This document shows, piece after piece, positions 15,001 to 64,000 of a DNA stretch of 64,000 nucleotides. Source of the stretch: Selaginella moellendorffii. Taxonomy: Eukaryota > Plantae > Lycopodiophyta. The notes beneath the pieces were generated by a model. It was not told the origin of the DNA, made no database searches, and was given only the letters and a program-made list of their open reading frames with translations. How positions within the stretch are numbered: position 1 is the stretch's first letter; each line of letters begins with the position of its first letter. The stretch is from positions 319,679 through 383,678 of the forward strand of contig NW_003314365.1 in the NCBI RefSeq assembly GCF_000143415.4, given 5' to 3'. A program made the translations under genes and the position numbers.

Positions 15001-16221
15001 ATTACATTGACTCCCTACCAATAGTCCAGACGCCCGAGGTGTTTGGTCTCCACTCCAATGCCGATATTAGCTACTACACCAATACGACCAAGAACCTGTG
15101 GAAAGACCTTGTGGACTTGCAGCCTCGTGGAGGGGACAGTGGAGGCGGGGTGAGAAGAGAGGACATCATTGAGCGTGTGGCGTCAGATATACTGTCCAAG
15201 CTTCCTGTGCCTTTTGATCTTCCTGTGTTGAAGAAAAGATTTGGAGTCCCTACGCCCGTGCAAGTAAGTCACGCCTGCTATTGTTTGTCAACTTCTTGGA
15301 TGCCTGCCCCAGGTTGTGCTTCTCCAAGAGATTGAGAGATGGAACAGGCTTATTACCAGCATGGCAGAGAGCCTTCGAAAGCTCAAGAAAGCACTTGCTG
15401 GAGAGATTGGGATGAGCAAAGACTTAGACGAGCTCTCAACGGCTTTGTTTAATGGGCAGCTTCCAAACATGTGGCGCAGGCTAACCTCTCAGGTATAGAT
15501 CAGTTTTATGAAATCCGTATTATTGATGTGTTGGTTAATGTTAATGCATTGGAAATTAAATAAAAAATAAAACACAGACAGAGAAGATGCTTGCAGCTTG
15601 GATTGTGTGGTTGTTGCGGCGAGATCAACAATACAAAAATTGGGCCGAGCACGGGGAGCCGAAAGTTATGTGGCTGTCGGGCCTCCAGATTCCCGAAACA
15701 TATATTGCTGCACTTGTTCAAACTGCGTGCAGGGACCGCGGTTGGCCACTAGACAAGTCCACTATCTACACTAAGGTTTTTGTTTATACCGTTTCCTTGC
15801 TTGTCATTTAAAGATGCTCCACAGGTGACCAAGTTCAAAAGCATTGACGAAGTCCCGGAGAAGCCCAAGCATGGATGCTATGTCACTGGCCTCTATCTGG
15901 AAGGCGCCAATTGGGATCTGGAAAAGTCTGTTCTCAAGCGACAGGTACTAGTCAATGCCAGTGGAAGAGAAGCGTTAACGTTGCTTGTCTCCCCAGGATC
16001 CAAAGCAGCTCGTTGTCGAGCTGCCAATATTGGAAATCATTCCCATGGAGGCCAGCAAGATCAAGCTTCAAAACACGTTTAGAACGCCTGTTTACGTCAC
16101 ACAGGCACGCCGAAACGCTATGGGCGTGGGACTCATCTTTGAAGCGGACTTGGCTACTGAGGAACACACGTCACATTGGGTTCTGCAAGGAGTTGCTCTG
16201 TCCATGAACATCGACCACTGA
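1..16221 (+). CDS. DNAH10: Axonemal inner-arm dynein I1/f alpha heavy chain (DNAH10 / Chlamydomonas DHC1-PF9 type); multi-exon, 5' end lies before the window
   Basis: Spliced exons give [12 protein letters not shown] (tail), P-loops GPAGTGKT (~6333), GPTGGGKS (~7403), GESGTAKT (~8764), GVGGSGKK (~10081), [23 protein letters not shown], stalk/MTBD (~10900-12140), AAA5/6 and C-terminal [15 protein letters not shown] (stop 16219-16221). Dozens of short GT-AG introns, mostly ~45-60 nt. Confidence 0.95.
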
Positions 16222-19100: not shown

Positions 19101-19869
19101 ACTGAAAAGCGTCCTAAAAAGTGAAAAAAACGAATGTCATGTCTGCTATGGATCGGAAGAGAAGGCTGCTGAGGCCGTGTGTATAGAGGGCCCCTCCAAG
19201 CAAGCAAAAATCAGGAACCTTTTGTTGCTTCTCTCGCAATAAAGCTGGTGGATAGAGAGGTAAACCAAGCTGATATACATATTTGAGTTTGGGTAGAGAA
19301 ACCCAGGAGTAGGCAAAAGCGCAGATAAGATATAGGTTGTGGAAATTTTTCTGACTCTGCTTGAAGGAAGAAGAGTGGTAATTAATCAATACTAGCTCAT
19401 AGCTGAAGCCAATGTTCCTGCTCAATTGTATGCTGAATCCACCAGAAAAGAGTAGGATCGGTAAAGGCAGCCATGGTCTGGCTCTGGCTGCAACACGAAG
19501 GCTATAGCTGCAGCACTTAGGCGGCCATGGCAGCAGCTTTACGAAGGCTGCAGCTCTAGCGCTAAAGCGGCCAAGGTGGAATGGACTTTCCTTGTAAAAG
19601 AGGTACAAAAGTGTATACCTTATGTTCTCTCTTGTAGGTGCATGATAAAATAGAAATAGCAAGATGGAAGATCTATTGCTCAGGGAAAGAAAGGTTCCAT
19701 GGTGAAGTTTGAAGCTCAAGCAACAATGCAAGCATGCAAAAGAAACCTTAAACACACGAAAAGAACAAAATAATTCATAGCATACTTGAAACAACCCATC
19801 AAAAGCAGTTGATTGACAAGCCGAAAGGACCAAGCAACTTGGGCCACTCTGATTTCACACATTTTATAA

Positions 19870-21655
19870 ACCATTTGCACTTGTTTTTTTAGGTACTAAT
19901 CTATCTGGGAATCTTGAAGGAACTCTGTCCTTTAGCTTGCTAAGGGCTCTCCTTTTGCAAGCTTTCTAATTGCCATATAGTCTAATATAGATAATTCCAT
20001 ACTTTAGACTTTTGATAGCATCACGATTGTTAATAATAACATGTTCGAGCACCCATTTGATTCTCCATTCCCAATTTGCATAACCACCTTTGGTTATGTC
20101 TTTTGATTCCTATGGTTAGGCTCTATCTCTTTACTACTTACTTTTTGGCATTACGCCTTCTATTTAGTTATTCTCGTCCTATCTAAAAAGGTAGTTTTGC
20201 ACTTTCTACCATGCGTTAGCAAGTATTCTTAGGGATGAATTTACTCAATAACTTAAGGAGTGGTTTTTCAATTTGGATATGCTCACTGTGTAATCCCACA
20301 CACTGGGATTAATGTTGCTATGCATGGGCCTTTTTATGCCCATTGCTAGCGATGCCAAAATCCATTTTTGGCTTTATCCAATTTAAATAGATAAACTTTT
20401 CCTATCTCCGCAACCTTGGACGTTGGATAGCACCTCCTATCTATTATTCGCTAAGGACTTAGTCCCTTGGGCCTTATATAATGCCCTCATGATTCCAAAT
20501 ACCACTCTCTAATGTTTTAAAGTGTTTTGGTGTCTCAATAATGACCTTATTTGACAATGAGCATTTCCCTTTATGACATTGACTTATTATATCTTAACAT
20601 GAGTAATTTATTCCCCGGAGGGGTACATCTAACCTCCTTATCTGAATAAAAAGTCTTAGATAGTTAACTTTTACTAATCCAATCAATTATTTTGCATGGT
20701 TTGCTTAGTTTTCTCATAGTTATCAAGTCTTATAACTCATTGCTAGTGCTTCCACACCCTTATCATTATTTGGGTCACTACACTATAACCACATACCTTC
20801 CAATTTAGGCTATGCCATTCCTATTTCCATTCGAATTCCTTTGGTAAGGGGTTTTTTTTAAACCTATTAACTTGACCTCAAGGCATCACACTTTTGCATA
20901 TTTAGTGTCTCCACACTATTGGCTTTACAAATTTACCTTTATGACACTTCCCACTTGTGTTTAGATCTTTGCCAAGACCAAAGTAGTTATTTTGCATGCC
21001 AACTATTAGTTAGTACTACACCATAGTGTTCACATACAACTCTATGCCAAAGTTGTTTTTTTCCGGAAACACTTTTCCCATGACTTTAATATAACACATT
21101 CTGCCCTCAATGAGATACCCACTATTCTTATAGTTGGATCTTATGATCCTCCCTATCCTTTGTAGGGTACAACACACTCTAGTCCAAATGCTTCCACCAA
21201 TCCTTTAAGATCATTCCTTGACTCCACTCGAGTCATTTAGCTTTTTGAACTTTGCTAATTCGACGATCTATAAGGTCCTAGCCTCTTAGCTATTTTTGAG
21301 GTGCCAGTTCACTAAAATACATCTTCTTGTATTCCTATTCTACTCACAAAGACCATCTTTGCAAGTATTATTCCAACACTTAATTGTTTTTCATTTTCCA
21401 TGGGTTACCTTTGCCTCTTAAGACTATCCGTCCATATGATGAGAAATACCGACTCATCCTCTAAATACACCTTCCACTCCTTGGGTTTGTTCCAGCATTT
21501 ATAAAAAGTAACTCCGGCTACCATTTCAAAGACTTGTATCCTCTTCTGTATTTGACCTCCCACGGTTAATAATTTTGATTTTAAATTCATGAGCACCAGC
21601 CTCAACTATATGAGGATAATCTTGACTCCTTTATTGTTTTAGAGTCTCTATTTTT
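19870..21655 (-). mobile_element. Decayed non-coding internal region of LTR family A
   Basis: 19870-20640 is the reverse complement of ~30036-30820; ~20900-21655 is homologous to 37130-37880. No open reading frame. Confidence 0.7.
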
Positions 21656-24209
21656 CCTGTATAGGTTGTGGAAATTTTTCTGACTCCAGTTGAAGACTGT
21701 CTACTTTCTTGCCACCATTTCCTAAATAGTATTTTAACTTTTGAAAATTGTTGTTCCCACACTATTTATCAAGAAGTTTATTTATCAATCTGGTCAATTG
21801 ATCACCACATACGGAAACATATGTGTCAGAAACCAAAATGAAGCTATGTAGTTGCAATGTTCTTGTTTGGACAAAGATTAGGTGGCGGCTGTGTTCCAGC
21901 AACATTCGATAGATGAGAGGCTCACCATCGTGGGTAGGAAATCCAAAAGCAAATAGATCTCTAAATTTCAATTCTTGAAGTAACTTTTCAAATCTCTCCC
22001 CATCAATCCTCTCTAATGGGTATATCACTATCTCTCTACTTTGAAAAGGGACACTATTTTCATTCTCCTAATACTCTCAAAAACAACTTCATCTACACTT
22101 AGAAAAATTTAGATTGTTCTTTAAATAGTTTAAAAGTTCTTTATGTAGTTTAAAATTCTTTTGATTAGATCCCACTCGCTCTCAGAGAGGGGAGGGGAGG
22201 CAGAAAAAAGGGATTTTTAGGCACTTCGCTCCACTCCAAAATAGGTCTATTGAAAGCAACACCAATAGCTCTTAGAAGAACACGAGCAGCGTGAGCAACG
22301 TAAGGAAGTGCTCGTAGTGTGTGAGTCTTGAATCTTTTAACTCTATGCTCCTTACCGCATCTACTTAATCAATAGTGCCTTCTGTATTCTTTGGAATAAG
22401 CCATAACAACCAAGAACACTAAAAAACCCTAAACAATAAAGAAAGAGGGTGGCTGTTGATCTACGTGGATTTGGTAATTCTTTCTCATGCAAGTATTGAA
22501 CTTGCGACCTCCAGTGAGGGCTACTGCTACTGCTGGTCCTGCTCTAGCAGCTATTGCTGTCGATGATGCTGCTGCTGCTGCTACTGCCCTCTCTCACGAT
22601 AGCATACTTGGCGTGGCTACTACACCCACTGCGGCTGCTGCTACCCTCTCCCGTGATAGCATACCTGGCGTGGCTGTTGTGCTGGTTGCTGCTACTGGTG
22701 CTCTGCCAGCTGTGCAGCTGTTGCTGCCAATGCTACTACTACTGCTGTTGCACTGGCTCTTGTTGTGCTGGCTGTTGCTACTGCTTTGTTTGCACTCGTT
22801 GAACCTACCACCATTTCCTAAATAGTGTTCTAACATTTAAAAATCATTATTCCCACATTGTTTATCGAGGAGTCCATTTATGAATTTGGTCAACTGATCA
22901 TCATATACGGAAGCATATATGTTAGAAACCAAAATGAAGCTGTATAGTCGCAATGTTTTTGTTTGAACAAAGATTAGGTGGTGGCCATGTTCCAGCAACA
23001 TTTGATAGATGAGAGGCTCACCATCATGAGCAACAAACAAATCTCAAGATTTCAACTCTTGAAGTAACTTTTTGAATCTCTCTCCATCAATCCTCTCTAA
23101 TGGGTATATTACTGTCTCTCCACTTTGAAAAGGGACACTATATCATTCTCCCAATACAACCGAAAACAACTTTATTTACACTCAGAAAATTTTTGACCAT
23201 TTTTAAAGTAGTTTAAAAGTTCTTTATGTAGTTTAAAACTCTCTTGATTAAATTCCGCTTGCTCTCAAAGAAGGGAGGTAGAGGAAAGGGATTTTTAAGC
23301 ACTTCGCTCCACTCCAAAATAGGTCTATGGAAAGTAGCACTAATAGCTCTTAGAAGAGCATGAGCAAGTGCTTGTAATATGCAAGTCTTGAATCTCTTAA
23401 CTCTATGTTCCTTACTGCGTCTGCTCAATTGATAGTGCCTTTTGTATTCTTTGGAATAAGCCCTAACAACCAAGAATATTGAAAAATTCTAAACAATAAA
23501 GAAACAACACCGCCTTTGATCTTAGGGTTGCATGGTTTTGGTAATTCTTTCTTATGCAAGCATTGAACCTACAACCTCTAGCGAGGGCTGCTGTTGCTCC
23601 TACTCTAGTTGCTACTACAGTTGTTGATGCTGCCCTCTCCTACGATAGCATACCTGGCGTGGCTGCTGCTGCTCTTGCTTTGTCTGTTGCTACTGCTACT
23701 CTTGCTCCGCCAGTTGCTGCAACTACTGCTGCCTTCTCTCGCGATAGCATACCTAGCATGGCTGTTGTGCTAGCTGCTACTGCTGCTGCTCTACCAGCTG
23801 TGTGGCTGCTGCTGCCAATGTTGCTATTGCTGCTGCTTGCCAGTTGCTACTGTGCTAGCTGCTGCTGCTGCTCTGCTTGTACTTGTTGAAGAATATCAAC
23901 TTTCCTGCCACCATTTCCTAAATAGTGTTCTAACTTTTGAAAATCGTTGTTCCCACACCATTCATTGAGGAGTCTATTTATCAATCTGGTCAATTGATCA
24001 CCATATATGGAAGCATATGTGTCAGAAACTAGAATGAAGTTGTATAGTCGCAATGTTTTTATTTGGACAAAGATTAGGTGGCGGCCATGTTCTAGCAATA
24101 TTCAATAGATGAGAGGCTCACCATTGTGGGAAAGAAATCTTCAAGTAAATAGATCTCTAGATTTTGACTCTTGAAATAACTTATGAAATCTCTCCCCATC
24201 AATCCTCTC
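21656..24209 (-). repeat. ~1.1-kb tandem repeat, about 2.3 units, with CAG/GCA-rich tracts
   Basis: CCACCATTTCCTAAATAGT recurs at ~21712, ~22808 and ~23908. Each unit has a degenerate minus-strand frame (...HDGEPLIYRMLLEH..HLIFVQT..LGNGGRKVD..); the two full units carry (GCT)n-rich tracts. Confidence 0.85.
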
Positions 24210-25226
24210 TGATAGGCGCAAAATCTGCATATCCTAGAGCAACATCATCTCCCTTGACTTGGCACACTCTAGTGGCTTGGAAGTGGCTATTAACACAACT
24301 GTCCTTGTCGCGCATGTGACTTTGGGTATCGAAAGTTACCTGTCGACCAGTCCTTACGGACACTCTTACCTTACTGCCATGATGGCAAGAGGTCGGTATT
24401 GCTGGTCCCTTTATCAGTCCCTCTTGTGCTAGTGGAGTTAACTGGGCATTTAGAGTGTACTTAGACCGGACGAGCATAAGAATGGAATTCCTACGTGTTA
24501 TAAGCTAAGCATACTTAGCCCGGTAAGGAGTTCCAGTTTCGTTTTATCTTGCACTTGCTAGTGACAAGAACCCTCGCGTATTGAGATTAGTCCCTTAATA
24601 TCGCTACATGATAGCTTACCGTGTCTGCCAAACACCCTCACTATCATGCCCTTTGTGTTAGTCTCATTTTGGTCCCAAAAGCTATTTATGGAAAGTGTCC
24701 AGATTTGCTCGTTTGGCATATCTACGGAATGTAGAGATTGGCCTATACACAATGGTGTTCGTCCCGTGTCCAAATTCACAATCTAGGGACATTCCATATT
24801 TAATAAGTTTCGAGCTTATCCCAGAGACTAACTCCTGATACTAAGAGAGGCTTGGGGTGAAAGCCCAAACTGTGTTCCTCAAGGGGGGGGGGGGGGGGGG
24901 GGGCTGTGGGGGGTTCCAAATGTATAGTAGGGATAGTGGGTAGGTCGGGCATGGCCGACCAACCCGAGGCATAGTCTAGCTCCCGCTTGCGTGCCTGTCC
25001 TTGTTCTACATCCGGCTTGGGTCTAAGCCCAAGTTTCATTCCATGCTAACTGGTGGAGTACCTATATCCTCACGTTAGGCCACCGGTATGCCGAAATAGC
25101 ACCAGACTTTGTTTGGCTCCGTTTTGTGTGCTGGTCCTGGCATTGGGATGTTGGTTGCTCTAGGACTATTCCAAGTCACTCCGGGCTCCTGTCCCTTCAC
25201 TCCTTGGGCTGTACGCTCGGGAGTTG
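24210..25226 (+). mobile_element. LTR of family B, 3'-truncated
   Basis: Starts TG at 24210, interrupting the tandem repeat. Reverse-complement homologue of 44400-45104 and of 63790-64000. Contains a G21 run at 24883-24903. Confidence 0.8.
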
Positions 25227-27309
25227 TATGCATGGCGTGAGGCATAGGGCCCAGAATTTTCCTTACAGGATCTGAGACTGATTGAGGAACTTCCTGCAAA
25301 GGTTGTTTCTTATTTTTTCTTTTGATTTTTGTGACTAAATCTTTCTCTTATTGTAGGAGCTTTCCCACCAGCTTGCATTGTTCTACAAGCATGTTTTGAG
25401 AGACGATGGGAAGCCTTACCCTCCAGCAACTCTGAGGGATATGTTTTTTTGCTTTAACCGAGTATTGAAGCTGGCAAGAGAAGCCCGAGTTGCAAGAACA
25501 GGAGTTTTAGAAGAAGAAGTTGACATCCTGAATGATCCAAGGTTTCTTACAGCAAGGTATCTTGCTTTTTTTGTTCTTTTTGTTGTGGTTTGTGTTCTAA
25601 TATGTTTGGTTTGGTTTGTTTATTCTAGGAACACTGCTAGCCATGTAATTCAAAAAGCAGCACTAGAAACTACAAGGCCAACAAGTATAGGGTCAAAGCA
25701 TGTGTACTTGTCGATGGCTGAGCTTAAGGCAGTTCTCACGTTGCCAGAGTTTCTACCTCACAGTCCTAATGGACTGTTTCGGTTAGTTGTACTATTCTGC
25801 ATGAATTTCTTTCTTGTACGTGGGAGGAAGGAATTGTACGACTTGCGATTCACTGATTTTACACTTTTGGAGGATGTTGTTGGTTGCTATATCCAGTTGA
25901 GTAGTTTCTTATTTGTTTTCTTTGTTCTTGTCGGTTCTAATCAGAATTTTTTTTGTCTCAGATTCAACCAACGTGTTTCCAAAAACTACCAAGTGGATCT
26001 GATGAATTGTAAGAACATGGATCGGTGGCCTGTTGTGGATCTCTATGAAATAGATACTCCCTCAGTCTACAAGGCATTCAAGCTTTTTTTTGATAAGCAT
26101 CTAGCAGTTGGTGATGGGGAGGACTTGAACAAGCAGTCGTTTTTCCTAGCTTGTAATGATTGTTTGAACATGACTGATAATTGGTACTGTCGAGGGGCAC
26201 GGATAGGAGAGCATAAGATCTCTGAAGTAGTAAAATTGGTTGCCGCAAAAACAGGTAGTTAACTAACTGCTTTCTTGTTTGCTCATAGTTTTTTTTCTCC
26301 AGGTTTTAGCCTTTCAGCGAAAGATATTCGGCATTCAGCAATTACAACTATGAGTGTTTGCAACACTCCAATGGAAGACTGTATGGAGCTGATAGGACAC
26401 AAGAGGGTGGAAAACATGGAACAGTAAGGTTTTTGCTAACTATTTTGTCATTAATGCCTCTTTTTTTAACAAGTACGATCACTTTGGGAAAGCAAGGAGA
26501 ATGGCAATGTCATCTGTTCTGTATAACCGGTATGATCGTACTGGTCCTTTGAAAATTTACCAGGACGAATTTCGGAAAGCATCAGAGTATATTGTACGGT
26601 GCCATGAGGCTGGTAAACCTTTAAATGAAGATCCATTGGATCTTCAAGATTGCCATCTTGTTTCTTTTGGTAATTCAAAGCTTTTTTTTTTGTGGAGGTT
26701 TAACACTCTTCAATTCAGGTGGAAATGACAATTAACAGACTCAAAATCGTGAGCAGCAACAATAAAATTTTGGTAAGAAACTTTATAATCTTTATAATGG
26801 ACTTTTCTCTTTTCTCGATTTTAGGTGGTCCTGGGCAGCAACAGCCTTCTCCAAGAGAAGAGATCCACGAACAGGAACTGAATCACCACCAAGTTCTGGA
26901 CGTGATTGAAGAGCAGCAAGGTAAGAAAATTCTTTCTTTCCTTTTTTCTTTCAATTTAGTTTTCTCTTTATTTTAGGTGGACACGACAAGCAACACGAGA
27001 CTGTGCACGAGACTGTGCCAGAGCCTGTGCCAGAGCATGGCAAGTAGCAGGAATCCATTTCTGGAGACAAAGGTAAAGTTTATTTGATTTGAATTCTTTA
27101 TTTCTAACTTTTGATGTTATTTGGTAGATCTTGACAACAATGAGCTACTTTTAGCTCTTGCGAAAGATCCAAGAGCTGCAAAAGCTTTAGCACTACCGAC
27201 GATCACCAGCACATTTCACCACTGTTCTATGAGTAATTGTGTGATTGTAGTCAATGGTCATAGCCAAAGTGAGCTTGAATTATTCAAGCTTGCTTTGATT
27301 AAAAAATAA
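25221..27309 (+). pseudogene. Intron-containing tyrosine recombinase, Crypton/DUF3504 type (5'-truncated, pseudogenised)
   Basis: Spliced product: AWREA*..IEELPAKELSHQLALFYKHVLRDDGKPYPPATL..FLTAR..LVRGRKELYDL..SKNYQ..FFL..NWY..IGEHKI..AKDIRHSAIT..LIGHKRVENMEQYDH..MSSVL..TFHHCSMSNCVIVVN. Introns 25302-25356, 25557-25628, 25896-25961, 26255-26302, 26424-26472 (acceptor AG>AA), plus four more in the tail. Confidence 0.85.
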
Positions 27310-27334
27310 AAAAGCAATTGCATCTCGTCTGATT

Positions 27335-27557
27335 GGAGAATGTGGTTACTGGCAGCTAAGTTCTCTAGAACCTGGATGACAGCAGCCATGTTCTCTAGAA
27401 CCTGGTGGCTGGCAGGTGGGTTCTCTAGAACCTGGTAGCTGTCAGCCACATTCTCTAGAATGTGGCTGACAACAGTAAAATTTTCACAGAGAACCTGACT
27501 TGATCCGATGGCTGCCAACAGCTGGATCAAGTTAACGGGCGAGCCACAGCCCATTAA
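27335..27557. repeat. Putative Crypton 3' terminus: four 30-bp-period repeats, a 14-bp palindrome and a 9-8-9 inverted site
   Basis: TTCTCTAGAA at 27361, 27391, 27421 and 27451. GTCAGCCACATTCT-CT-AGAATGTGGCTGAC at 27441-27470. TTAACGGGC-GAGCCACA-GCCCATTAA at 27532-27557. Confidence 0.7.
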
Positions 27558-30035
27558 GGTTAGGGAAGTAGTTCCCGAGTGTTCAAAGAAAGGGCTTTGA
27601 ACGAAAGTCGATGGTCAAGGACTTTCACGCTTATGCAGGAACCATGTTACCGTGGTCGGAGGACTTGCCAAGCGAGATTGGCAAGTCGGGGGGAACAAAT
27701 ACCCTAGTTGAAGGTGATAACTTCAAAAAAGGTGGGCCATGGGGCCAAGCATGGAGGAGTCCATGCATGATCACAGACTTGTCAAGTGAGAGGTGTGGAG
27801 GAACTAGGTTCCTAAGCTGTGATCTGTAGCATGCTTTAAGTATAAGTTGGTGCACTGGCGTGATGAGTCACACCAGGCATCCTGGGTGATGCTGTCCGTA
27901 GATGCATATACGGAGGTTGGGTTCGAGTCCCAACCCTCTAGTGCTTGGGTTCGAGTCCCAAATCACTAGGGTGTGGTGATGGTTTGGAATATGAGGACAC
28001 TCATATTTTGGTGGTCATGGACTCTCAATGAGGAGATTGGCTTCGGCATATCGCCAAGTGGGGGATGCCTCGGAGTTGTGATGCACGTTAGATTGCTTAG
28101 AGTGAAAGCTCAGCATATCTAACTTGAACACTTTGGTGCAAAGGGCACCAAGGACGTGGTGAATGAGATGGGGACACCCAGTCTCAGTTGCTATGGATCC
28201 TTGGCTGGAAGGGTTGGTTTGGGCGCATCGCCAAGTGTGGGGGATGCCCCCGGGGTCATAGTCAACAATTTAAGAAGGTTTGCAAGACCTAGTTCATATT
28301 GGTAGACCTGTTAAGGGGTCAAGATGAGATCACTAGGTGATCTTGTGGCTAAAACAAGGACAAGGTTTTTATTTGGGTTAAGGAATACGATTCCTAGTTC
28401 AAAATGTTGATTTGAACTATTGATAATGGTGTGGCTTGGTCAAGGTGACCAAGTGGGAAGAACACTTAAGGGAAATGAGCTATGTCAATGTAATGGCATA
28501 GTAAGTATGAGGAAAGTAATCTTTATAAGAGATCCATGGGAGGGTCTTAAAGTTGGGCTGTGGATAGAGCCCACAGTAGAAAATGTTAAAGAAACGTACT
28601 AGGGGTGAACACCCTTTGGACTTGGCAAAACAAAGTGTTTGTTATGGAACCGAAAAGATACCTCGAGAATGGAGGTAGCAATCCTATGTTGCTAGGTGCA
28701 ACAATCAAGGATAGGAGCAAAAGACTAGTAGCCAAGTATGGGCCATGAAGATCATTGGAGGGAAACCAAATGGCAAAGTTAAGCATGGAACACTAAGGTG
28801 TTAGATGCTAACGGATGGTGAGAAGGGAAGTATGCTTCCAAGGATGGATTCCCAAATGCTCAAAGGGTGAAAGCTCCAAGGAGGAAGTGGCAAAGTAGCC
28901 AAATGATAGGGCCATAGATAGCCCTAGCACAAAGTATGATAACTAGAACTTAGTGCCTAAGGTGGCATGAAATATAAGAGGTACAGAACTGTGCCCTCAA
29001 GTAAAGAACTTCCTAAGGTGGGTAAGTGAAGTTGCACAATATGTGCAATGAAAGGTGTCAGAGACACTTAGGAAATTGACTCTGACAAGTCAAAACTTAA
29101 AAGTTCCAAAGTGCAAAGGTTATGTCAATGGAATCTAAAACTACTCGAGGATGAGTAGTGGAATTGAGTTAGAGAAAGTATCTCTAATAGGTTTAGCGAG
29201 AACTAAACCAATAAAAGGGAGAAAACCACCCTAGGTGGCTGAATGAGTCTCTATGTTGGAGGGACTATGCTCCTTAGAGGACTGACAAGGCATGGTGAGC
29301 CTTCGGTGTCAAACCATAGACAAAAACTGGTTGGGTGCCAAGGATGGAAAGGGTAATACATATTGGTGTTACTTTATAAAAATGGTTTACCGTTCGATGA
29401 GGACATCGAACTTTGTCTATGGGTGGTGTGTGAGACACAAAATCCCTAGGCCCCAAAGTGGAGCCGGAAGGGTGCCATGTGGTAGTGGCTGAAGCGAAAG
29501 CCAAACGAGCGTAACACGTTTGGACTAAAAGCTCCGACTTGGAATGTTGAGAGCGGGAGAGGAACTCCCAACAAAGTGCTTGAGGAACAAGCATGAAGCG
29601 AGCAATAAGCGAGGCTCCAAAAAGGGACCCAAAAAGGACCAACACATGACACGTGGAAGTGTCCGAGATGGAGTCCGAGGCGGACCCTAGTTGGAGTCCG
29701 AGATGGACCCGAAGTGGAGTCCGAGATGGAGTCCGATATGGAGTCCGAGATGGACCCGAAGTGGAGTCCGAGGTGGACCGAAACGGAGTCCGAGATGGAC
29801 CTGAGATGGAGTCCGAGATGGAGTCCGAGATGGACCCGAGATGGAGTCCGAGATGGAGTCCGAGATAGAGTCCGAGATGGACCGAGACGGAGTCCGAGAT
29901 GGAGTCCGAGATGGAGTCTGAGAAGGACCCGAGATGGAGTCCGAGGTCGGGACCAAGACCGGGACCAAGACCGAGACCGAGACCGAGACCGGGACCGAGA
30001 CCGAGACTGGGACCGGGACTGAGACCGAGACCGAG
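27556..30035 (+). mobile_element. LTR family A fragment 1: non-coding internal region, PPT and partial LTR
   Basis: Colinear with 30895-33395. LTR start TGTGAGACAC at 29429 follows GGGTGGTG. Satellite tract at 29660-30035. Confidence 0.8.
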
Positions 30036-33000
30036 GCATAAGGAAGTTGGATATACCCTTACGGGGGATAAGTTGCTTGTGTTGCGATATAGTAAGTCAA
30101 TGTCATAAAAGGAAATACTCATTGTCAAGAAAGCCATCATTGGGACACCCAGACACTCTAGAACACCAGAAGGTGGTGTTTGATGTCGCGAGGGCAATGG
30201 ATAAAGCCCAAGGGACTAAGTCCCTAGCAAATGATGGATAGAAGGTGCTATCCAAATGTCCAAGGTGGCGGAGACAGGAGAAGACTGTCTACTCGAATTG
30301 GACAAAGCCAAAAATGGAATTTTGGCAAGGCTAGTGATGGGCATGTAAAGGCCCATAAGCAACAATGTAATCCCAGTGTGTGGGATTATAAGGTGAGCAT
30401 ACCCGGATTGAGGAACCACTCCCTGGGCTATTGGGTAGGTTCATCCCTAAGAATACTTGCTAAAGCATGATAGAAAGTGCAACGCTATCCTCCTGGTCTG
30501 GAGGAGAATGACCAAAGGAAAGGTGTGAAGCCAAAAAGCAAGAAGTAAGGGGATAGAACCGAACCATAGGATTCAAAGGGCATAACCAAGGTTGGTTATG
30601 CCAGCTGGGAGTGGAGAATCAAGTGGGGGCTCGAGAGTGTTGCCGCTAACAACCGTGATGCCATGGAGAGTCTAAAATATGGAATTGTCCATGTTAGACT
30701 ATGTGGCATTTTGAAGGCTTGCAAAAAGGGAGGCCTTAGCAAGCTGAGGGACAGAGTTCCTTCAAGGTTCCCAAAGACGATTCTAGGTAGCTTAGTACCT
30801 AGAAAGGCCAAGTGTAAATGGTTCATGGAATGCGCGAAATCAAAGTGGCGCAGCAGAAGCGTGGTCTTGGAGCTTGCCATGAGGCAAGGCTATCAAGGTT
30901 AGGGAAGTAGTTCCCGAGTGTTCAAAGAGAGGGCTTTGAACGAAAGTCGATGGTCAAGGACTTCCACGCTTATGCAGGAACCATGTTACAATGGTCGGAG
31001 GACTTGCCAAGCGAGATTGGCACGTCGGGGGAACAAATACCCTAGTTGAAGGTGATAACTTCAAAAAGGGTGGGCCATGGGGCCGAGCATGGAGGAGTCC
31101 ATGCATGATCACAGACATGTCAAGTGAGAGGACTTGGCAGTGTGGAGGAACTAGGTTCCTAAGCTGTGATCTGTAGCGCACTTTAAAAATAAGTTGGTGC
31201 ACCGGCGTGGGGAGTCACGCCAGGCATCCTGGGTGATGCCGTCCGTAGATGCATATACGGAGGTTGGGTTCGAGTCCCGACCCTCTAGTGCTTGGGTTCG
31301 AGTCCCAAATCACTAGGGCGTGGTGATGGTTTGGAATATGAGGACACTCATATTTCGGTGGTCATGGACTCTCAGTGAGGGGACTGGTTTGGGCACACCG
31401 CCAAGCGAGGGATGCCTCGGAGTCGTGATGCACGGTTAGATTGCTTAGAGTGAAAGTTCGGCATATCTAACTTGAACACTTTGGTGCAAAGGGCACCAAG
31501 GACGTGGTGATGAGATGGGGACACCCAAGTCTCAGTTGCTATGGATCCTTGGCCGGAAGGGCTGGCTTGGGCGCACCGCCAAGTGTGGGGGATGCCCCCG
31601 GGGTCATAGTCAACAACTTAGAAGGGTCTGGAAGACCTAATCCCTATTGATAAACCTATTAAGGGGTCAAGATAAGATCACTAGGTGATCTTGTGGCTAA
31701 ACAAGGACAAAGTCTTTGTTTGGGTTAAGGAATATGATTCCTAGTTCAAAGTGTTAATTTGAACCATTGATAAAGGTGTGGCTTGGTTGAGGTGACCAAG
31801 TGGGAAGCACACCTAAGGGAAATGAGCTATGTCAATGCTATGGCATAGTAAGTCCAAGGAAAGTAGTCTCTATAAAAGATCCAAGGGAGGGTCTCAAAAA
31901 GTTGGGCCGTGGATAGAGCCCACGACAGAAAATGTTAAAGAGATGTACTAGGGGTGAACACCTTTTGGACTTGGCAAAGCAAAGTGTTTGCTATGGAACC
32001 GAAAGGAAACCTCAAAAATGGAGGTAGCGATCCTATGTTGCTTGGTGCAACAATCCAAGGATAGGAGCAAAAGACGAGTGCCCAAGATAGGGCTGTGGAA
32101 TCCATTGGAAAGAATCCAAGTGGCAAAGTTAGCCAAGGAACACTAATGTGTTTGATGCTAACGAATTGCGGAAAAAGAGGTGGGCTTCCAAGGATGGATT
32201 CCCAAGTGCTCCAATTTGGCAAAGGAAAGGCTCCAAGTGAGGGAGCAACTAAGTAGCCAAAAGATAGGGCCGTGGACAGCCCTAGCACAAATAATGATAA
32301 ATGGAACGTAATGCCAATGGTGGCACAAAAATAGAAAAGAGGATGAGGGTGCCCTCGAGTAGAGAACTTCCTAGGAGGGGAAGTGGAGTTGCACAAAATG
32401 TGCAAGGCAAGGTGTCGGAGACACCTAGGAAATTGACTTCAAGAAGTCAAAAGTAAACGTTCCAAAGTGCAAAGGTAGATCAATGGAATCTGTGACTACT
32501 CAAGAATGAGTAGTGGAATTGAGTTAGAGAGGGTGCCTCTAACGGGTTTAGCGAGAACTAAACCAATAAACGGAAAGAACCACCCCAAGTGGTCCAATCA
32601 GTTTCTAAGTTAGAGAGACTATCCTCCTTAGAGGATGGACAAGGCATGGTGAGCCTTTGGGGTCAAACCATAGACAAATATTGGCCGGGTGCTAAGGATG
32701 GGAATGGTAATACCTGCGGGCGTTACTTTATAAAAGGGTTTACCGTTTGATGAGGACATCGAACTTCGTCTATGGGTGGTGGAGTTGTGAGACACAAAAT
32801 CCCTAGGCCCCAAAGTGGAGCCGGAAGGGTGCCATGTGGTAGTGGCTGAAGCGAAAGCCAAACGAGCGTAACACGTTTGGACTAAAAGCTCCGACTTGGA
32901 ATGTTGAGAGCGGGAGTGGAACTCCCAATAAAGTGCTCGAGGAACAAGCATGAAGCGAGCAATAAGCGAGGCTCCAAAAAGGGACCCAAAAAGGACCAAC

Positions 33001-34505
33001 ACATGACACGTGGAAGTGTCCGAGATGGAGTCCGAGGCGGACCCTAGTTGGAGTCCGAGATGGACCCGAAGTGGAGTCCGAGATGGAGTCCGATATGGAG
33101 TCCGAGATGGACCCGAAGTGGAGTCCGAGGTGGACCGAGATGGAGTCCGAGATGGACCTGAGATGGAGTCCGAGATGGACCCGAGATGGAGTCCGAGATG
33201 GAGTCCGAGATAGAGTCCGAGGTGGACCGAGACGGAGTCCGAGATGGACCCGAGATGGAGTCCGAGATGGACCGAGACGGAGTCCGAGATGGAGTCCGAG
33301 ATGGAGTCCGAGATGGAGTCCGAGGTCGGGACCAAGACCGGGACCAAGACCGAGACCGAGACCGAGACCGGGACCGGGACCGAGACCGAGACCGAGGCCA
33401 AGGCGGAGACCGAGCCCGAGCCCGAGTCCGAGTCCGAGTCCGAGTCCGAGTCCGAGTCCGAGTCCGAGTCCGAGTCCGAGTCCGAGTCCGAGTCCGAGTT
33501 CGAGTCTGAGAGGGTGAAAGCCCAAAGCGTTCGTCTCCCAGACCCTGGGGGGTTTGGTGAGCTCCAAAAGTATAGTAAGGGGGAGGACTGCAGTGGAGCC
33601 AGTTTGGCCAGGAAAGGCCAGTTTGGCCCAGGAAGGCCAGACCCAGTGTTGGGTGATGAGCTGCCCACTGGGAAGTCCAAGACTAGAGTGAACCCAGACC
33701 GACAAGCGGGGTAGCTTGGTAAAGTGTTCAAGAGCCGGCTCTAGTTCCCCCGGGAGATCGACTGGCCGATGCTCCCAGTCCAAGTGTGGGTGGCACTACC
33801 TACTTGGATACCTGGTGTGGCTCAATGGAACCCGCTCTAAGCCCATGGCTAGAGCACCCAAGGGCAGAAGGCGAGGAGAGTACCTAGGTGGCTCGTGTAA
33901 GGCCACGGTGTTCTGAAATGTTGTCCCAAAGGCCCAGACTATGGAAAGGAAGAGGAGCAGTCCTCTGGGGTAGTGACCAAGGACACAGTCGTGTGGTGAG
34001 GAAGTCCCAGAGGACCGTGGGACTTAGTGGTCGGGCCTGTGGGTCTCGATCCAGTGGCAGTGTTGGCAAACACGGCCAGGGGCAGAAAGGGACTTAGTGG
34101 GGACTGACAGAGGGATATTGGGGAAGGCTATTCCCCTTGTCGGTGGGCATCCTAAGGATGCTAAGGAGTGGATCTGAGATGACCACTCACGGATGGTTTG
34201 CCTAGTCTTGGAGGGCCAAGACGGTGATGCAAGTGGTGTTGGACCACCAGTGTGACCAAGGTAAATGGGCATGGCCTTAGCGTAACGGGCCGGTACGTCG
34301 GTGATACCTTGGGTTGTCGATCATGGGATCGGACACGTGGAGCACTTGGACCAAGTGCTAAGGGTGAGTGGCATGGATGCCATTCTCGGGGCTAGCAAGC
34401 CCCAAGTCCTGAGTTGGACTTATGGAGGTTGTCAATGAGACCCCTCCAAGTGGTCAGAGGTGTGGTTAAGTGACTAAAGTAAAATGGAAAATTAAGTCGC
34501 TTACA
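30036..34505 (+). mobile_element. LTR family A fragment 2: non-coding internal region, PPT and complete ~1.72-kb 3' LTR (32786-34505)
   Basis: PPT GGGTGGTGGAGT precedes TGTGAGACAC (32786); the LTR ends GTCGCTTACA (34505). This end matches the minus-strand LTR end at 38202, which is followed by a PBS. Confidence 0.85.
33015..33510. repeat. LTR-borne GGAGTCCGAGAT / GAGACC / GAGTCC satellite
   Basis: 12-mer array grading into a near-perfect (GAGTCC)n run at ~33423-33497. Related arrays at 29660-30035, 34745-35420 and 36370-37000. Confidence 0.95.
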
Positions 34506-34514
34506 TGGTGGAGT

Positions 34515-35562
34515 TGTGAGACACAAAATCCCTAGGCCCCAAAGTGGAGCTGGAAGGGTGCCATGTGGTAGTGGCCGAAACGAAAGCCACACAAGCGTAA
34601 CACGTTTGGACTAAAAGCTCCAACTTGAAAAGTTGAGAGCGGGAGTGGAACTCCCAACAAAGTGCTCGAGGAACGAGCACGAAGCAAGCAATGAGCGAGG
34701 CTCCAAAAAAGGGACCCAAAAGGACCAACATATGACATATGGAAGTGTCCGAGATGGACCCAAGTTGGAGTCCGAGATGGACCCGAGATGGAGTCCGAGA
34801 TGGAGTCCAAGATGGACCCAAGGTGGAGTCTGAGATGGACCCGAGATGGAGTCCGAGATAGAGTCTGAGATGGACCCGAGATGGAGTCCGAGGTGGAGCC
34901 CGAGATGGACCTAAGATGGACCCGAAATGGAGTCCAAGATGGACCGAGACGGAGTCCGAGATGGAGTCTGAGATGGACCCGAGACGGATTCCGAGATGGA
35001 GTCCGAGAAGGACCCGAGACGGAGTCCGAGGTCGGGACCGAGACCGGGACTGAGACCGAATGCTTTGGGCTTTCACCCTCTCAGACTCAAACTCGGACTC
35101 GGACTCGGACTCGAACTTGGACTCGGTCTTGGTCTCGGTCTCAGGCCCGGGCTCAGTCTCGGTCTCGGTCCCGGTCTCGGTCCCGGTCTCGATCTCCGTC
35201 CCAGTCTCGGTCTTGACCTCGGACTCCATCTCGGGTCCTTCTCGGACTCCATCTCGGATTCCATCTCGGATCCATCTCGGACTCCATCTCAGACTCTGTC
35301 TCGGTCCATCTTGTACTCCATCTCGGGTCCATCTCAGACTCCATCTCGGGTCCTTCTCAGATTCCATCTTGGACTCCATCTCGGGTCCAGCTCGGACTCC
35401 AACTCAGGTCCATCTCGGACACTTCCATGTGTGATGTGTTGGTCCTTTTGGGTCCCTTTTTGGAGCCTCGCTTATTGCTCACTTCATGCTCGTTCCTTGA
35501 GTACTCCGTTGAGAGTTCCACTCCCGCTGTCGAGATTTCAAGTTGGAGCCTTTTAGTCCAAA
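34515..35562. mobile_element. Two partial family-A LTRs in inverted (fold-back) arrangement
   Basis: A plus LTR starts TGTGAG at 34515 and runs to ~35058; 35060-35562 is the reverse complement of the same LTR portion. Confidence 0.8.
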
Positions 35563-35563
35563 C

Positions 35564-38500
35564 TGTAAGCCACAAATTTTTCCTTTCCAATTTGCCAGCT
35601 TACCTCATCTATCCGACCTACTCTGCCTTGGCTTGTGCTAAGTTCCCTCGCCAAGGTTCCCGCCTATGGTACCAGCTCCTACTTGGTCCTACTTGGTTTC
35701 AGCTACTTACTGCATGAGCAACGGAGTGTTAGCCATCCATCTACGGATTCCCAAATCTCTCCCAATCCCCCTCCCCGGGTTAAACTGGACTTAAGGTTCG
35801 GCTACACTCCCCGCAGGCACAAACAGCCAAGCACACCAAGCCTCCAGATTCCTAACACCCCTTCGTACCACAAGACTTGATCATGGGACCCTCTAAATCC
35901 CAAGTCTTGGGTGCAGCACTTGCTTCGGGACGTCGGGGCGAAACACCGTGGCCTAACGGCCCAGTATGGGTACCTCTACCCCCCCTCTTCCATCCCGAAG
36001 GGAAGGCCCAAGCCCCCGGAAGGGCGGGGACCAATGAGCCACAAGGTACTCAAGTGGGGCACCACTCCACCTGAGCCGGGAGCACCGCAGTCGGTTTCCC
36101 TTTCGGGAGTGGGAGCTGCTCTTGAGCACTTCCTTGGATGGCCCCTCCGGCACCAGCCAAGTCCATGCTCACTCCCACCCAAGGCCCCTTGGTCCCAGTC
36201 TCAACCTCAAGTCGGTTTGGAAGCCCAACTGGAGAGTCCCTTCAAAACTGGTTCCTGGACCTCACTATCCCTACTATACTTTTGGAACCCCCTGCAGCCC
36301 CCCCCCCCCCTGGGAGACGCACGCTTTGGGCTTTCACCCCTTGACCCGTATTAGTATTTGGACTTAGTCTCTGGCTCGATCTCGGACCCAATTTCGGATC
36401 CGACTTCGGATTCGGTCTCGGACTCGATCTCGGACTCGATCTCGGACCCGATCTCGGACCCGACCTCGGACTCGACCTCGGACTCGGTCTCGGACCCGAT
36501 TTCGGATCTCGGACTCCGTCTCGAACTCGGTCTCGAACTCGGACTCGAACTCGGTTCCCGAGTCGGTCTCGGACTCGATTCCGGACTCTATCTCGAACTC
36601 GGTCCTAGAGTCGGTCTTGGACTCGATCCTCGACTTGGTCCCATCCGATGAACTCTTTGTCATTTCGGTCAAGCTTTCGGGGATCCTTTAGCCTACGACA
36701 TCTCGGGGAGTCGGTTCCTTACAACTCCACCACCCATAGAAGAAGTTCGATGCCCACATCGAACGTCTCGTTTTATCCTACGACTTATTGACCATGTCTC
36801 CGGGGGTCTCGGACTCGATCTCGGACTCAATCTCGGACCCGATCTCGAACTTGACTTCGGACTCGACCTCGCACTCAGTCTCGGATCCGATTTGGATCTC
36901 GGATTCTGTCTCGAACTCGGTCTCCGATTCGGCCTCGGCTCGATCCCAGACTCTATCTCAAACTCGGTCTCAGAGTCGGTCTTGGACTCGATCTTCGACT
37001 CAGTCCCATCCGATGAACTCTTTGTCATTTCGGTCAAGCTTTCGGGGATCCTTTAGCCTACGACATCTCGGGGAGTTGATTCCTGACAAAGGGTTCTTAT
37101 GAACCCACCAACATAACCTCAAGGTATCACACCTTGGCACATTTGGTGTCTCCACACCATTGGCCCCACGAGCTTATCTTTATAACACTACTTATTAGTG
37201 TCTAGGTCTTTGCCAAGACCAATATGGTTGTTCCTCATGCTAACTATCTGTTAGCACTGCACCATAGTGTTTGCACCCAACTCTGGGCCAAAGTTGCTTT
37301 CTTCTAGGAACATCTTTCCCACAACTTTAGTATGGCACATTCTGCCATCAATGAGATACCTACTGTTCTCATACTTGGATCTTATGATCCTCCCCATACC
37401 TCATGGGGCACCATATACCTCAGTCCAAATACTTCAACCAATCCCTCAGGATTATTCTTTGACTCTTATTTGAGTCAGCCAGCTTTTTGGACTTTATCAA
37501 CTGACAACCTGTGAGGTCCTACCTTTAATGTGCTAGCTCACAGGAATACAACTTCTTGTATTCAGGTCCTACTCACAAGGACCATCTTTGCAAGTGTTAC
37601 TCCGACACTTGATTTGTTCTCTTGGGGCAACCTTTTGCCTCTTAGGACCACTTGTCCATGTGATGAGAATACCAACTCATCCTCTGAGTACACCCCCAAC
37701 TCCTTGGGTTGTTCCAGCATTTAATAGAGGTAGCCCCGGTTACCATTTCGAGAACTTGTGTCCTCTTCTGTATTTGACCTCCCACGGTCACCAATTCCGG
37801 TCTCAAATTTATGAGTACCAGCCTCAACTTCAAGAAGGTAATCTTGTGACTCCTTTATTGTTTTGGAGTCTGCATCTTTCCCGTGATCCCAACTATAGTT
37901 GTTTACCACAACTACATTAACCCGTTTGCTGCATCAAACACTCATTTGGATCACATCCTCAGCTCTCTGAGGAAACCCTTATACTGTTCCCAAGATCCCA
38001 AAGTCGTTCCCTTACTAGCCTCTTTTCTATCCACCATATCTCGCCGAAGTTCATGCATGAACTTGAGTGGAGAGCTATGTCCTCTCGACATGCTACTCCT
38101 CAAGGATAGGCCCACTCCTAGGACCTTCTAATGCCAATATCAATGGTGATATACTTAAGCACTAATAAAAGTTGGACTAAGGAACAACCCCGATACCAAG
38201 TTGTGAGCGACTAAATTTTCCATTCTACTTTAGTCACTTAACCACACCTCTAACCACTTGGAGGAGTCTCCTTCACAACCTACTTAAGTCCAATTCAGGA
38301 CTTGGGACCTACTAGTCCTGAGAATGGCATCCATGCCACTCATCCCTTGCACTTGGTCCAAGTGCTCCACGTGTCCAGCCCCAAGATCTACACCCAAAGG
38401 TACCACTGACATATCAGCCTATTGCACTAAGGCCATGCCCATTCACCTGTGTCGCACTGGTGGTCCAATACCACTTGCATCATAATCCCGTCTCTCCAAG

Positions 38501-45104: not shown

Positions 45105-45204
45105 NNNNNNNNNNNNNNNNNNNNNNNNNNNNNNNNNNNNNNNNNNNNNNNNNNNNNNNNNNNNNNNNNNNNNNNNNNNNNNNNNNNNNNNNNNNNNNNN
45201 NNNN
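45105..45204. other. Assembly gap (100 N)
   Basis: Run of N; true distance and orientation across it are unknown. Confidence 0.99.
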
Positions 45205-63140: not shown

Positions 63141-63557
63141 TGTAAAACACAAATCCCTAATCCCGAAGTGGAATCAAAAGTGAGCCATGTGAATTGCTAT
63201 GTTTCATGCAAACTAAGTGTTACTTCTAGGTTATGTAAGAAAAGCTTTTGATTGTGTCCTATGGCATCTTTTGATTTGGCATCTGCTAGAACTCCAAACC
63301 CCCATCTCATGGATGATCAGCTGATCACTGAAGATAATGATAGAGCTTATGAAAAGCAAAGACGATCACTATGCAATAGTGATCTAGCTGTGACTTTCCA
63401 ATCTCCATTAGGTTCCTTGTAAAATAGATCTCTGTGAAAGCTTGTTTCTGGAATAAAGCAATACTAATGTTGGCATTGTAAATAGAAATGACAAGGTGGA
63501 ACTGGTTGGTGAATCTGGTGGCTGTAATGCAAGACTCAAAATTAGAGCTTTATTATA

Positions 63558-64000
63558 TGTAGCGCATGTGGTTTTTACCCTTTATCCTATGGTGATTTAC
63601 TATAGGATAATACCACGAAGCAGAACCTAAACCCTCTTTATGCCACGTGACAGATGCCACTTGTCATATGCCACATGTTCAAAGGACAGTGGTGCAGAAC
63701 CCGAGGTTCAAGGCCTTGGGCCACTGAACAAAGGAACGGTGCCAAACTCTCAAACATGAAGCCAAGGAGTGACGGAACCGTACCACAGAGCAACTCCTGA
63801 GCAAACAGCCCAAGGAGCGAAGGGATAGGAGCCCGGAGTGACTTGGAATAATCCTAGAGCAACTAACATCCCAATGCCAAGACCAGCACGCAAAACGGAG
63901 CCAAACGGAGTCTGGCGCTATTTCAGCATACCGGTGGCCTAACACGAGGACATGGTACTCCACCAGGTAGCATGGAATGAACTTGGCTTAGCCCAAGCCG
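63558..64000 (-). mobile_element. Family-B LTR end, running out of the window
   Basis: TGTAGCGCATGTGGTTTTTACCC matches 44175 onward; no adjacent PBS. Confidence 0.85.

What the first reader, a model, noticed from the sequence alone, without database searches (positions are those of the whole stretch)
27532..27557. loxP/FRT-like site (9-bp arms, 8-bp asymmetric spacer) exactly at the Crypton right junction
Seen: TTAACGGGC-GAGCCACA-GCCCATTAA (one mismatch). Immediately after it, AAGGTTAGGGAAG resumes LTR-family-A interior; the uninterrupted paralogue at ~30891 reads TATCAAGGTTAGGGAAG. The element end TTAA therefore overlaps a T(C/T)AA target with microhomology. Established: tyrosine recombinases act on inverted binding arms flanking a 6-8 bp spacer. 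Inference: this is the cognate recombination or terminal site, so an intact family member could be a new eukaryotic site-specific recombinase/site pair. Caveat: the junction is at the outer arm edge, not in the spacer as in Cre/lox.
Basis: partly seen in the sequence, partly recalled or inferred. Interest (0 to 1): 0.75.

Follow-up and report, generated by a model that had tools for sequence, protein, structure and literature searches.

The report
Palindrome ending a spikemoss Crypton transposon
The 26-base palindrome is real and closes the non-coding tail of a dead tyrosine-recombinase (Crypton-type) transposon copy in the spikemoss Selaginella moellendorffii, but strand exchange seems to have happened just outside it, so it is at most a terminal recognition element, not a loxP/FRT-like crossover site.

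Summary
Observation confirmed. The site TTAACGGGC / GAGCCACA / GCCCATTAA lies at 27532-27557, and the paralogue at 30890-30906 reads as stated.

The genome is Selaginella moellendorffii.

As a palindrome it is unremarkable: 59 of this class occur in the window, against about 22 in shuffles. Its position is the informative part.

Two gene models on other scaffolds (SELMODRAFT_409570 and SELMODRAFT_418133) happen to read through the same family's tail. Both keep the palindrome and continue with AAGGAATT, the start of the next unit of a head-to-tail array. The window copy instead switches to repeat family A right after TTAAG (27558). So family homology ends at the palindrome's outer edge. It overlaps the paralogous site by 6 bases (ATTAAG vs ATCAAG). 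This matches the known Crypton model, in which exchange occurs at a short near-identical core.

The lox-like reading (crossover in the spacer) is not supported.

Limits:
- There is only one solo junction.
- The copy lacks its 5' part and its left junction.
- Family A has its own boundary at the same point.

The scan has already noted what is probably the same family on other DNA: a tetramer, a solo copy with empty sites, and a palindromic end-joint. Those notes are untested here.

Verdict: an ordinary Crypton terminus with a plausible but unproven binding palindrome.

The parts
25227..27309 (+). 5'-truncated remnant of an intron-bearing Crypton-type tyrosine recombinase gene. Exons as I read them: 25357-25566, 25630-25895, 25952-26256, 26305-26424, 26474-26668, then small exons to the stop at 27307-27309.
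   Evidence: P0001 = SELMODRAFT_428622 is 100% identical to window exons. Exon-by-exon Pfam gives weak, collinear hits to QRICH1, DUF3504 and Phage_integrase. 8 of 17 family members hit Phage_integrase, best E 1.8e-7. The motifs RGxxELYxL, SKNYxVDL, KxxR, GHK and xYD are conserved with fern relatives. The family's 5' region and first exon are absent from the whole window.
27310..27557 (+). Structured non-coding 3' tail of the element.
   Evidence: DNA fold -55.8 kcal/mol against -33.0 +/- 3.6 for shuffles, z = -6.3. Gene models P0002 and P0029 on other scaffolds read through the same tail.
27352..27478 (+). About four tandem 30-bp repeats, each with a GTTCTCTAGAAC core. Copy number varies between family copies.
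   Evidence: TRF period 30, 3.7 copies. The motif gives 5 hits here against 0.6 expected in the window. P0002 lacks 22 codons and P0029 lacks 10 codons in this stretch.
27440..27471 (.). Perfect palindrome with 15-nt arms, made by repeats 3 and 4. Not conserved in the other copies.
   Evidence: I2. The segment is missing from the P0002 and P0029 readings.
27498..27532 (.). Hairpin ACTTGATCC / GGATCAAGT (9-nt perfect arms, 17-nt loop) that abuts the flagged palindrome.
   Evidence: I5. The residues that encode both arms (NLIQ and GSSQV on the minus strand) are kept in both tail copies of P0029.
27532..27557 (.). The flagged 9-8-9 palindrome, the last structured element of the tail.
   Evidence: It is kept in P0002 (KLTGEPQPVK, compatible with a perfect right arm GCCCGTTAA) and in P0029 copy 2 (LMGYGSPVN, the same A mismatch plus one spacer change). 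It is altered in P0029 copy 1.
27553..27558 (+). ATTAAG: the 6-nt overlap between the end of Crypton-family homology and the start of family-A homology. Proposed exchange core T(T/C)AAG.
   Evidence: The window reads ...PQPIK|VREV where P0002 reads ...PQPVK|KEFPGF. Family-A homology starts at 27553.
27559..30037 (+). Repeat unit A1: non-coding, rich in hairpins, ending in a 12-bp minisatellite.
   Evidence: 88% identical to 30898-33414.
30038..30897 (+). Repeat unit X1. It starts ATAAGG and ends in a small hairpin (CTTGCC ATGA GGCAAG) followed by GCTATCAAG.
   Evidence: 78.5% identical to the reverse complement of 19840-20641. In that copy the unit is not followed by A.
30892..30897 (+). ATCAAG: the paralogous 'empty-site' counterpart of 27553-27558, at the X1|A2 boundary.
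24314..25226 (-). Truncated fragment of repeat family Z that abuts the left break of the Crypton remnant.
   Evidence: 24488-25223 matches the reverse complement of 44409-45103 (82.5%), and 25013-25226 matches the reverse complement of 63791-64000 (90%). Both full Z copies continue past that point (44174-44619 = 63557-64000).

Best explanation
Position 27558 is the true 3' end (the unit joint) of a Crypton-type DNA transposon of Selaginella moellendorffii.

The family's unit is circularly closed in head-to-tail arrays on other scaffolds. There the tail ...GCCC(A/G)TTAAG runs straight into the next unit's start, AAGGAATT....

In the window, the same tail is joined to repeat family A at a site that reads ATCAAG in the paralogue. 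This fits the Goodwin model for Cryptons: the recombinase exchanges strands within a short, nearly identical core, here T(T/C)AAG.

The 9-8-9 palindrome lies immediately inside that core. With the adjoining 9-nt hairpin and the 30-bp repeats it forms the conserved, strongly structured tail. I infer that this tail is the cis-acting end where the recombinase is loaded. I put the palindrome being a binding site at only about one in three overall. It is not the crossover site.

Shown: the sequence, the conservation in other copies at the amino-acid level, the tandem arrangement, the point where homology breaks, and the decay of this copy.

Inferred: that the break is an integration joint, and that the recombinase binds the palindrome.
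For: (1) P0002 (SELMODRAFT_409570, 1401 aa, 84% identical, another scaffold) matches the single window exon 26471-26623 with four separate stretches. It therefore reads through at least 4 tandem units.
(2) Its residues around 560-700 run from the tail repeats into KLTGEPQPVK, then KEFPGF..., then MDPPSF..., then ELSHQLALFYKHV (window exon A). The window reads KLTGEPQPIK and then diverges.
(3) P0029 (SELMODRAFT_418133, a third scaffold, minus strand) reads PRNSFL|MGYGSPVN. On the plus strand this is the palindrome followed by AAGAAGGAATT, the same joint.
(4) Family-A homology begins at 27553, giving a 6-nt overlap with 5 of 6 bases identical to the paralogue.
(5) A break at a palindrome edge is expected for only 0.75-2.3% of random positions.
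(6) The continuation expected if A had simply interrupted an array (the 5' region and exon 1) is found nowhere in the window.
(7) Published precedent: CryptonF-1_cRei ends in CACCG and targets CAYCG (PMC9977147), and Cryptons carry 4-6-bp terminal direct repeats (PMC3212892).
(8) The tail is far more structured than shuffles, z = -6.3.
Against: - There is only one solo junction, and its partner (left) junction is lost. The copy begins at 25227 against a truncated Z fragment.
- Repeat unit A starts at the same base in its other context (after X1). X ends there independently of A in its other copy. So the break coincides with a natural boundary of A, as expected if A was joined to or inserted into the Crypton.
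- A 5-6-nt microhomology is also what end-joining repair leaves.
- A tandem array cannot by itself define ends.
- All evidence from other copies is at the amino-acid level, from gene models that may hide introns.
- The arms carry a mismatch in the window and in P0029 copy 2, and are altered in P0029 copy 1.
- Similarity between the Crypton end and the X1 end beyond the 6-nt core is not significant (p about 0.2).
Confidence: 0.45

Rival explanations
1. Secondary breakpoint. Unit A (the start of a hairpin-rich, protein-less repeat, perhaps part of an LTR-type element) was inserted into, or joined by microhomology to, a Crypton array at its non-coding joint. The palindrome merely happens to be the nearest of several hairpins and has no role in the junction.
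For: A begins at the identical base after two unrelated left neighbours, X1 and the Crypton. X ends at ATCAA without A in its second copy. The left edge of the Crypton piece is clearly a rearrangement, with both partners truncated. 8.8% of tail positions lie at an edge of such a palindrome. The start of the rcX copy resembles the start of A (p about 0.003), which hints that ATxAAGG belongs to these units themselves.
Against: The rest of the interrupted Crypton does not reappear anywhere in the window. The two left flanks of A share 5 of 6 bases, which unrelated insertion sites would not. The break falls at exactly the base after which two other loci begin the next unit.
Confidence: 0.3
2. The terminus is real but the palindrome is incidental. 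The element does end at TTAAG, yet the 9-8-9 palindrome is a by-product of a tail built from palindromic repeats, or acts at the RNA level (3' UTR). Recognition would rest on the 30-bp repeats or on the 5' end.
For: The palindrome is statistically ordinary. The arms are imperfect in most readable copies. It shares the heptamer AGCCACA with the neighbouring repeats. The repeats give 5 motif copies against 0.6 expected.
Against: The palindrome and the adjoining hairpin are the parts kept in all readable copies, whereas the repeat number and the strongest palindrome vary.
Confidence: 0.15
3. A loxP/FRT-like core site in the strict sense: two recombinase monomers bind the 9-nt arms and exchange strands within the 8-nt spacer.
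For: The geometry (9-8-9 with an asymmetric spacer) matches the canonical layout.
Against: If exchange had occurred in the spacer, the right arm in the window would be target-derived. In fact it differs from the element's arm in other copies at 0-1 of 9 bases, and from the paralogous target (GGCTATCAA) at 3 of 9. The junction lies outside the arms.
Confidence: 0.04

Closest known systems
Crypton DNA transposons (Goodwin et al. 2003; Kojima & Jurka 2011, PMC3212892)
   Same: A single intron-bearing tyrosine-recombinase gene and no reverse transcriptase. No terminal inverted repeat partner was found. A short core is shared between the element's end and its target. The head-to-tail arrays fit a circular intermediate.
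   Different: The host is a lycophyte, with relatives in Adiantum ferns. The papers I could search list no land-plant Crypton. The tail carries 30-bp tandem repeats and a palindrome abutting the core, which those papers do not describe. Both termini could not be shown here.
CryptonF-1_cRei of Chlamydomonas reinhardtii (PMC9977147)
   Same: That element ends in a 5-nt motif (CACCG) and its targets tolerate one pyrimidine change (CAYCG). Here the pair is TTAAG against TCAAG.
   Different: That case rests on observed de novo insertions and excisions. This one rests on a single old junction. The recombinases are only distantly related.
Cre/loxP and FLP/FRT
   Same: Inverted arms around an asymmetric 8-bp spacer, and a tyrosine recombinase encoded nearby.
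   Different: Arms are 9 nt (with a mismatch) rather than 13. The exchange point lies outside the arms. No second site is present, and no binding data exist.
Helitron 3' end (hairpin upstream of CTRR)
   Same: A GC-rich hairpin a few bases before an element end.
   Different: The end is TTAAG, not CTRR. There is no Rep/helicase gene. The hairpin belongs to a unit that encodes a tyrosine recombinase in every copy read.

Membership tests
Crypton | Encodes a tyrosine recombinase with the catalytic residues | tested here: met
   8 of 17 family members hit Pfam Phage_integrase (best E 1.8e-7), and 1 hits DUF3435. P0002 scores 42.6 bits against a cut-off of 27.1, but that is summed over two units. 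The alignment keeps R (RGxxELY), KxxR, GHK and the xYD tyrosine. The window copy itself has lost the reading frame at the tyrosine exon.
Crypton | No reverse transcriptase or other transposase in the unit | tested here: met
   No such domain occurs in 25227-27557 or in the four units read by P0002. Caveat: gene models could skip a gene as an intron.
Crypton | No terminal inverted or long direct repeats | tested here: inconclusive
   The terminal 26-mer has no second match in the window at up to 3 mismatches. However, the 5' end of this copy is missing.
Crypton | Short (4-6 bp) direct repeat or microhomology between the element's end and its target | tested here: inconclusive
   The right junction shows ATTAAG against ATCAAG in the paralogue. 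The left junction is absent, and it is uncertain whether the paralogue is a true empty site.
Crypton | Several dispersed copies | tested here: met
   Copies lie on two other scaffolds (3.09 Mb and 1.71 Mb contigs), seen through P0002 and P0029.
loxP/FRT-type core site | Inverted arms flanking a 6-8-bp spacer | tested here: met
   9-8-9 with one mismatch.
loxP/FRT-type core site | Strand exchange inside the spacer | tested here: not met
   The right arm is element-derived, and the homology break lies after TTAAG.
loxP/FRT-type core site | Cognate recombinase binds the arms | not testable with these tools
   Needs EMSA or footprinting.
Helitron 3' terminus | CTRR end, insertion between A and T, Rep/helicase gene | tested here: not met
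   The end reads TTAAG, and there is no Rep/helicase gene.

The most novel reading that the evidence does not exclude
The T(N)AAG(G) core next to the palindrome is a reusable integration point. The lycophyte/fern Crypton recombinase inserts circles serially at the same core. This would build both the homogeneous Crypton arrays seen on other scaffolds and the mixed series Crypton-A1-X1-A2 in this window, all three joints of which carry AT(N)AAGG (27553, 30038, 30892). A and X would then be non-autonomous passengers of a plant site-specific recombination system.
Probability: 0.1. Interest if true: 0.7.

Novelty: new member of a known kind. Interest (0 to 1): 0.35.

Why it matters
Crypton ends are poorly defined in general, and no recombinase binding site has been mapped for any of them. 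A land-plant family whose unit joint is preserved in tandem arrays, and whose solo end stops at a short core next to a conserved palindrome, gives a concrete 26-60-nt candidate to test with the recombinase from a better-preserved copy. As it stands, the window copy is dead and the site is a hypothesis resting on one junction. The practical value as a new recombinase/site pair is therefore remote.

Tried and rejected
The DNA of the P0002 and P0029 loci, and of any other copy, could not be fetched. This was the planned decisive test.
An exact search for the 26-mer and a search for relatives of P0017 found nothing.
- The third word search, with the ORF crossing the X1 end, asked whether X is usually followed by A. 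It was blank.
- The search of earlier findings by sequence was blank twice.
- An AlphaFold model of fern relative P0005 from a 17-row alignment reached mean pLDDT 36.9 and is unusable, so no fold search was run.
- A profile search of PDB sequences gave no recombinase hit.
- Rfam had no match on the tail.
- Rejected: Helitron end (no CTRR, no Rep). Rejected: piggyBac footprint (18 nt between two TTAA is not an element, and the palindrome is part of the Crypton unit in other copies). Rejected: a terminal inverted repeat partner. Rejected: a lox-like exchange in the spacer.
- Extended similarity between the Crypton end and the X1 end beyond the core is not significant.
- I first took the donor of exon B to be mutated. 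On re-reading it is intact (CA|GTTGAGT).
- The count of 293 palindromes was an artefact of the N run. The correct count is 59.
- The spliced gene was searched exon by exon by reference. The joined protein was neither built nor searched.

Full report
**What is there.** The arms are TTAACGGGC and GCCCATTAA, with one mismatch (C27536 opposite A27553), around the asymmetric spacer GAGCCACA. GGTTAGGGAAG follows, and 30890-30907 reads CTATCAAGGTTAGGGAAG. Self-BLAST aligns 27553-30035 with 30892-33414 at 88% identity.

**Chance.** Taken alone, the palindrome is ordinary.
- Palindromes with 9-nt arms, at most one mismatch and a spacer of 6-8 nt occur 59 times in the window, against about 22 in shuffles. 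The 293 printed came from a 100-N gap and is wrong.
- Two stronger palindromes lie just upstream: 15-nt perfect arms at 27440-27471, and 9-nt perfect arms at 27498-27532.
- Only the position is unusual. Bases within 2 nt of an edge of such a palindrome make up 0.75% of the window, 2.3% of the Crypton piece and 8.8% of its tail.

**The element.**
- A word search identified the genome as Selaginella moellendorffii. The annotated protein SELMODRAFT_428622 (P0001) is identical to window exons.
- I searched the gene exon by exon by reference and did not build the joined protein. The exons give weak but collinear Pfam hits to QRICH1, DUF3504 and Phage_integrase.
- An exhaustive HMMER search found only 12 relatives in 1.84 billion representatives: one close Selaginella paralogue, several Adiantum fern proteins and a few metagenomic fragments.
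- Eight of 17 family members hit Phage_integrase, with best E 1.8e-7. The alignment keeps the recombinase motifs, including the xYD tyrosine.
- The window copy is dead.
  - The family's 5' region and first exon are missing from the whole window.
  - Its left edge at 25226/25227 abuts a truncated fragment of another repeat, Z. Both full Z copies continue past that point.
  - The annotated model leaves the family frame after ...VENMEQ and so lacks the exon that holds the tyrosine.

**The tail.** Positions 27310-27557 are non-coding and strongly structured: -55.8 kcal/mol against -33.0 +/- 3.6 for shuffles. From left to right the tail holds:
- about four 30-bp repeats with a GTTCTCTAGAAC core;
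- the 9-nt-arm hairpin;
- the flagged palindrome.

**Other copies, seen through proteins.** Two gene models happen to translate the family's non-coding tail.
- P0002 (SELMODRAFT_409570, 1401 aa, another scaffold) matches the single window exon 26471-26623 with four separate stretches. It therefore runs through at least four head-to-tail units.
  - One stretch reads tail repeats, then KLTGEPQPVK, then KEFPGF..., then MDPPSF..., then ELSHQLALFYKHV, which is window exon A.
  - The window reads KLTGEPQPIK and then diverges.
  - Valine instead of isoleucine is compatible with a perfect right arm GCCCGTTAA. The window's A would then be a CpG transition, but this is inference from codons.
- P0029 (SELMODRAFT_418133, a third scaffold) is a minus-strand model holding two tail copies.
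  - Copy 2 reads PRNSFL|MGYGSPVN. On the plus strand this is the palindrome, with the same A mismatch and one spacer change, followed by AAGAAGGAATT.
  - Copy 1 has an altered left arm and an unexplained right arm.
- At two other loci, then, the palindrome is followed by the start of the next unit. In the window it is followed by family A, from base 27559.
- The adjoining hairpin is also kept in P0029. The repeat number and the 15-nt-arm palindrome are not.

**Reading.**
- Crypton-family homology runs through G27558 and family-A homology starts at A27553. The two overlap in ATTAAG, which is ATCAAG in the paralogue.
- This is the signature proposed for Cryptons: exchange within a short, nearly identical core (PMC3212892). 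It has been observed for CryptonF-1_cRei, which ends in CACCG and targets CAYCG (PMC9977147).
- The palindrome lies just inside the core. Its right arm is element-derived, so it cannot be a lox-type crossover site. It may be a loading site for the recombinase, but nothing here tests binding.

**Why I stay cautious.**
- Unit A starts at the same base after a different left neighbour (X1). X ends there without A in its second copy, whose flank shows no similarity to A. So the break coincides with a natural boundary of A, as expected if A was joined to the Crypton rather than the reverse.
- A tandem array defines no ends, there is one solo junction only, and a 5-6-nt microhomology also fits end joining.
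- Against that rival, the interrupted Crypton does not resume anywhere in the window, and the two left flanks of A share 5 of 6 bases.
- Similarity between the Crypton end and the X1 end beyond the core is not significant.
- AT(N)AAGG sits at all three joints of the series Crypton-A1-X1-A2. The start of the older X copy resembles the start of A (p about 0.003). This is the basis of the speculative serial-integration reading.

**Earlier notes of this scan, leads only.** They describe a tetramer of 3.27-kb Crypton units, a solo 3.3-kb copy inside an LTR element with empty sites in sibling elements, and a long palindrome at the head-to-tail joint, all in this genome. The tetramer agrees with what I inferred independently from P0002. 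I could not check that these are the same family or read their termini.

**Dead ends.** Both metagenome scans, the third word search, the structure prediction (pLDDT 36.9), the PDB profile search and Rfam added nothing.

**Verdict.** This is most likely the ordinary 3' terminus of a decayed land-plant Crypton, with a short exchange core and an adjacent conserved palindrome of unproven function.

Noticed in passing
window 5424-15335 (+): Exons of a dynein heavy chain gene (DHC_N2, AAA_8, Dynein_heavy, AAA_lid_11, Dynein_C) fill the first quarter of the window. The transposon-rich region starts after about 17 kb.
   Followed up: partly
window 45105-45204: A run of 100 N (an assembly gap) inside repeat copy Z1. 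It inflates naive palindrome counts.
   Followed up: yes
window 27553, 30038, 30892: AT(N)AAGG lies exactly at all three joints of the series Crypton|A1|X1|A2. The motif is at chance frequency in the window overall (67 hits). The boundaries of another repeat (Y: 20835-21660 and 37079-37884) do not carry it.
   Followed up: partly
window 30866-30897: The end of unit X1 has its own small hairpin (CTTGCC ATGA GGCAAG) followed by GCTATCAAG, the same layout as the Crypton end. The older X copy lacks the 12 nt that make this hairpin.
   Followed up: partly
window 21689-24216: About 2.3 tandem units of a 1.1-kb repeat (72-86% identity) lie between repeat Y and the Z fragment.
   Followed up: no
window 29660-30036, 33015-33540, 34740-35430, 36310-36950: 12-bp minisatellites (GAGTCCGAGATG / GAGACCGAGACC types) end unit A and recur in direct and inverted orientation. 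They appear to be hot spots of rearrangement.
   Followed up: no
P0029 residues 1-9 (another scaffold): The first tail copy reads MAGCGSLVN, which implies a right arm GCCNGCCAT instead of GCCC(A/G)TTAA. This could be a different flank starting 4-5 nt earlier, or a 3-nt insertion. Unexplained.
   Followed up: no
P0004 (Adiantum nelumboides): A fern relative of the recombinase is fused in its gene model to a reverse-transcriptase (RVT_1) segment. This is probably a chimeric model across a neighbouring retrotransposon.
   Followed up: no
window 24884-24907: A run of about 24 G inside the Z fragment. Related sequence follows the minisatellite of unit A2 at 33505-33590.
   Followed up: no
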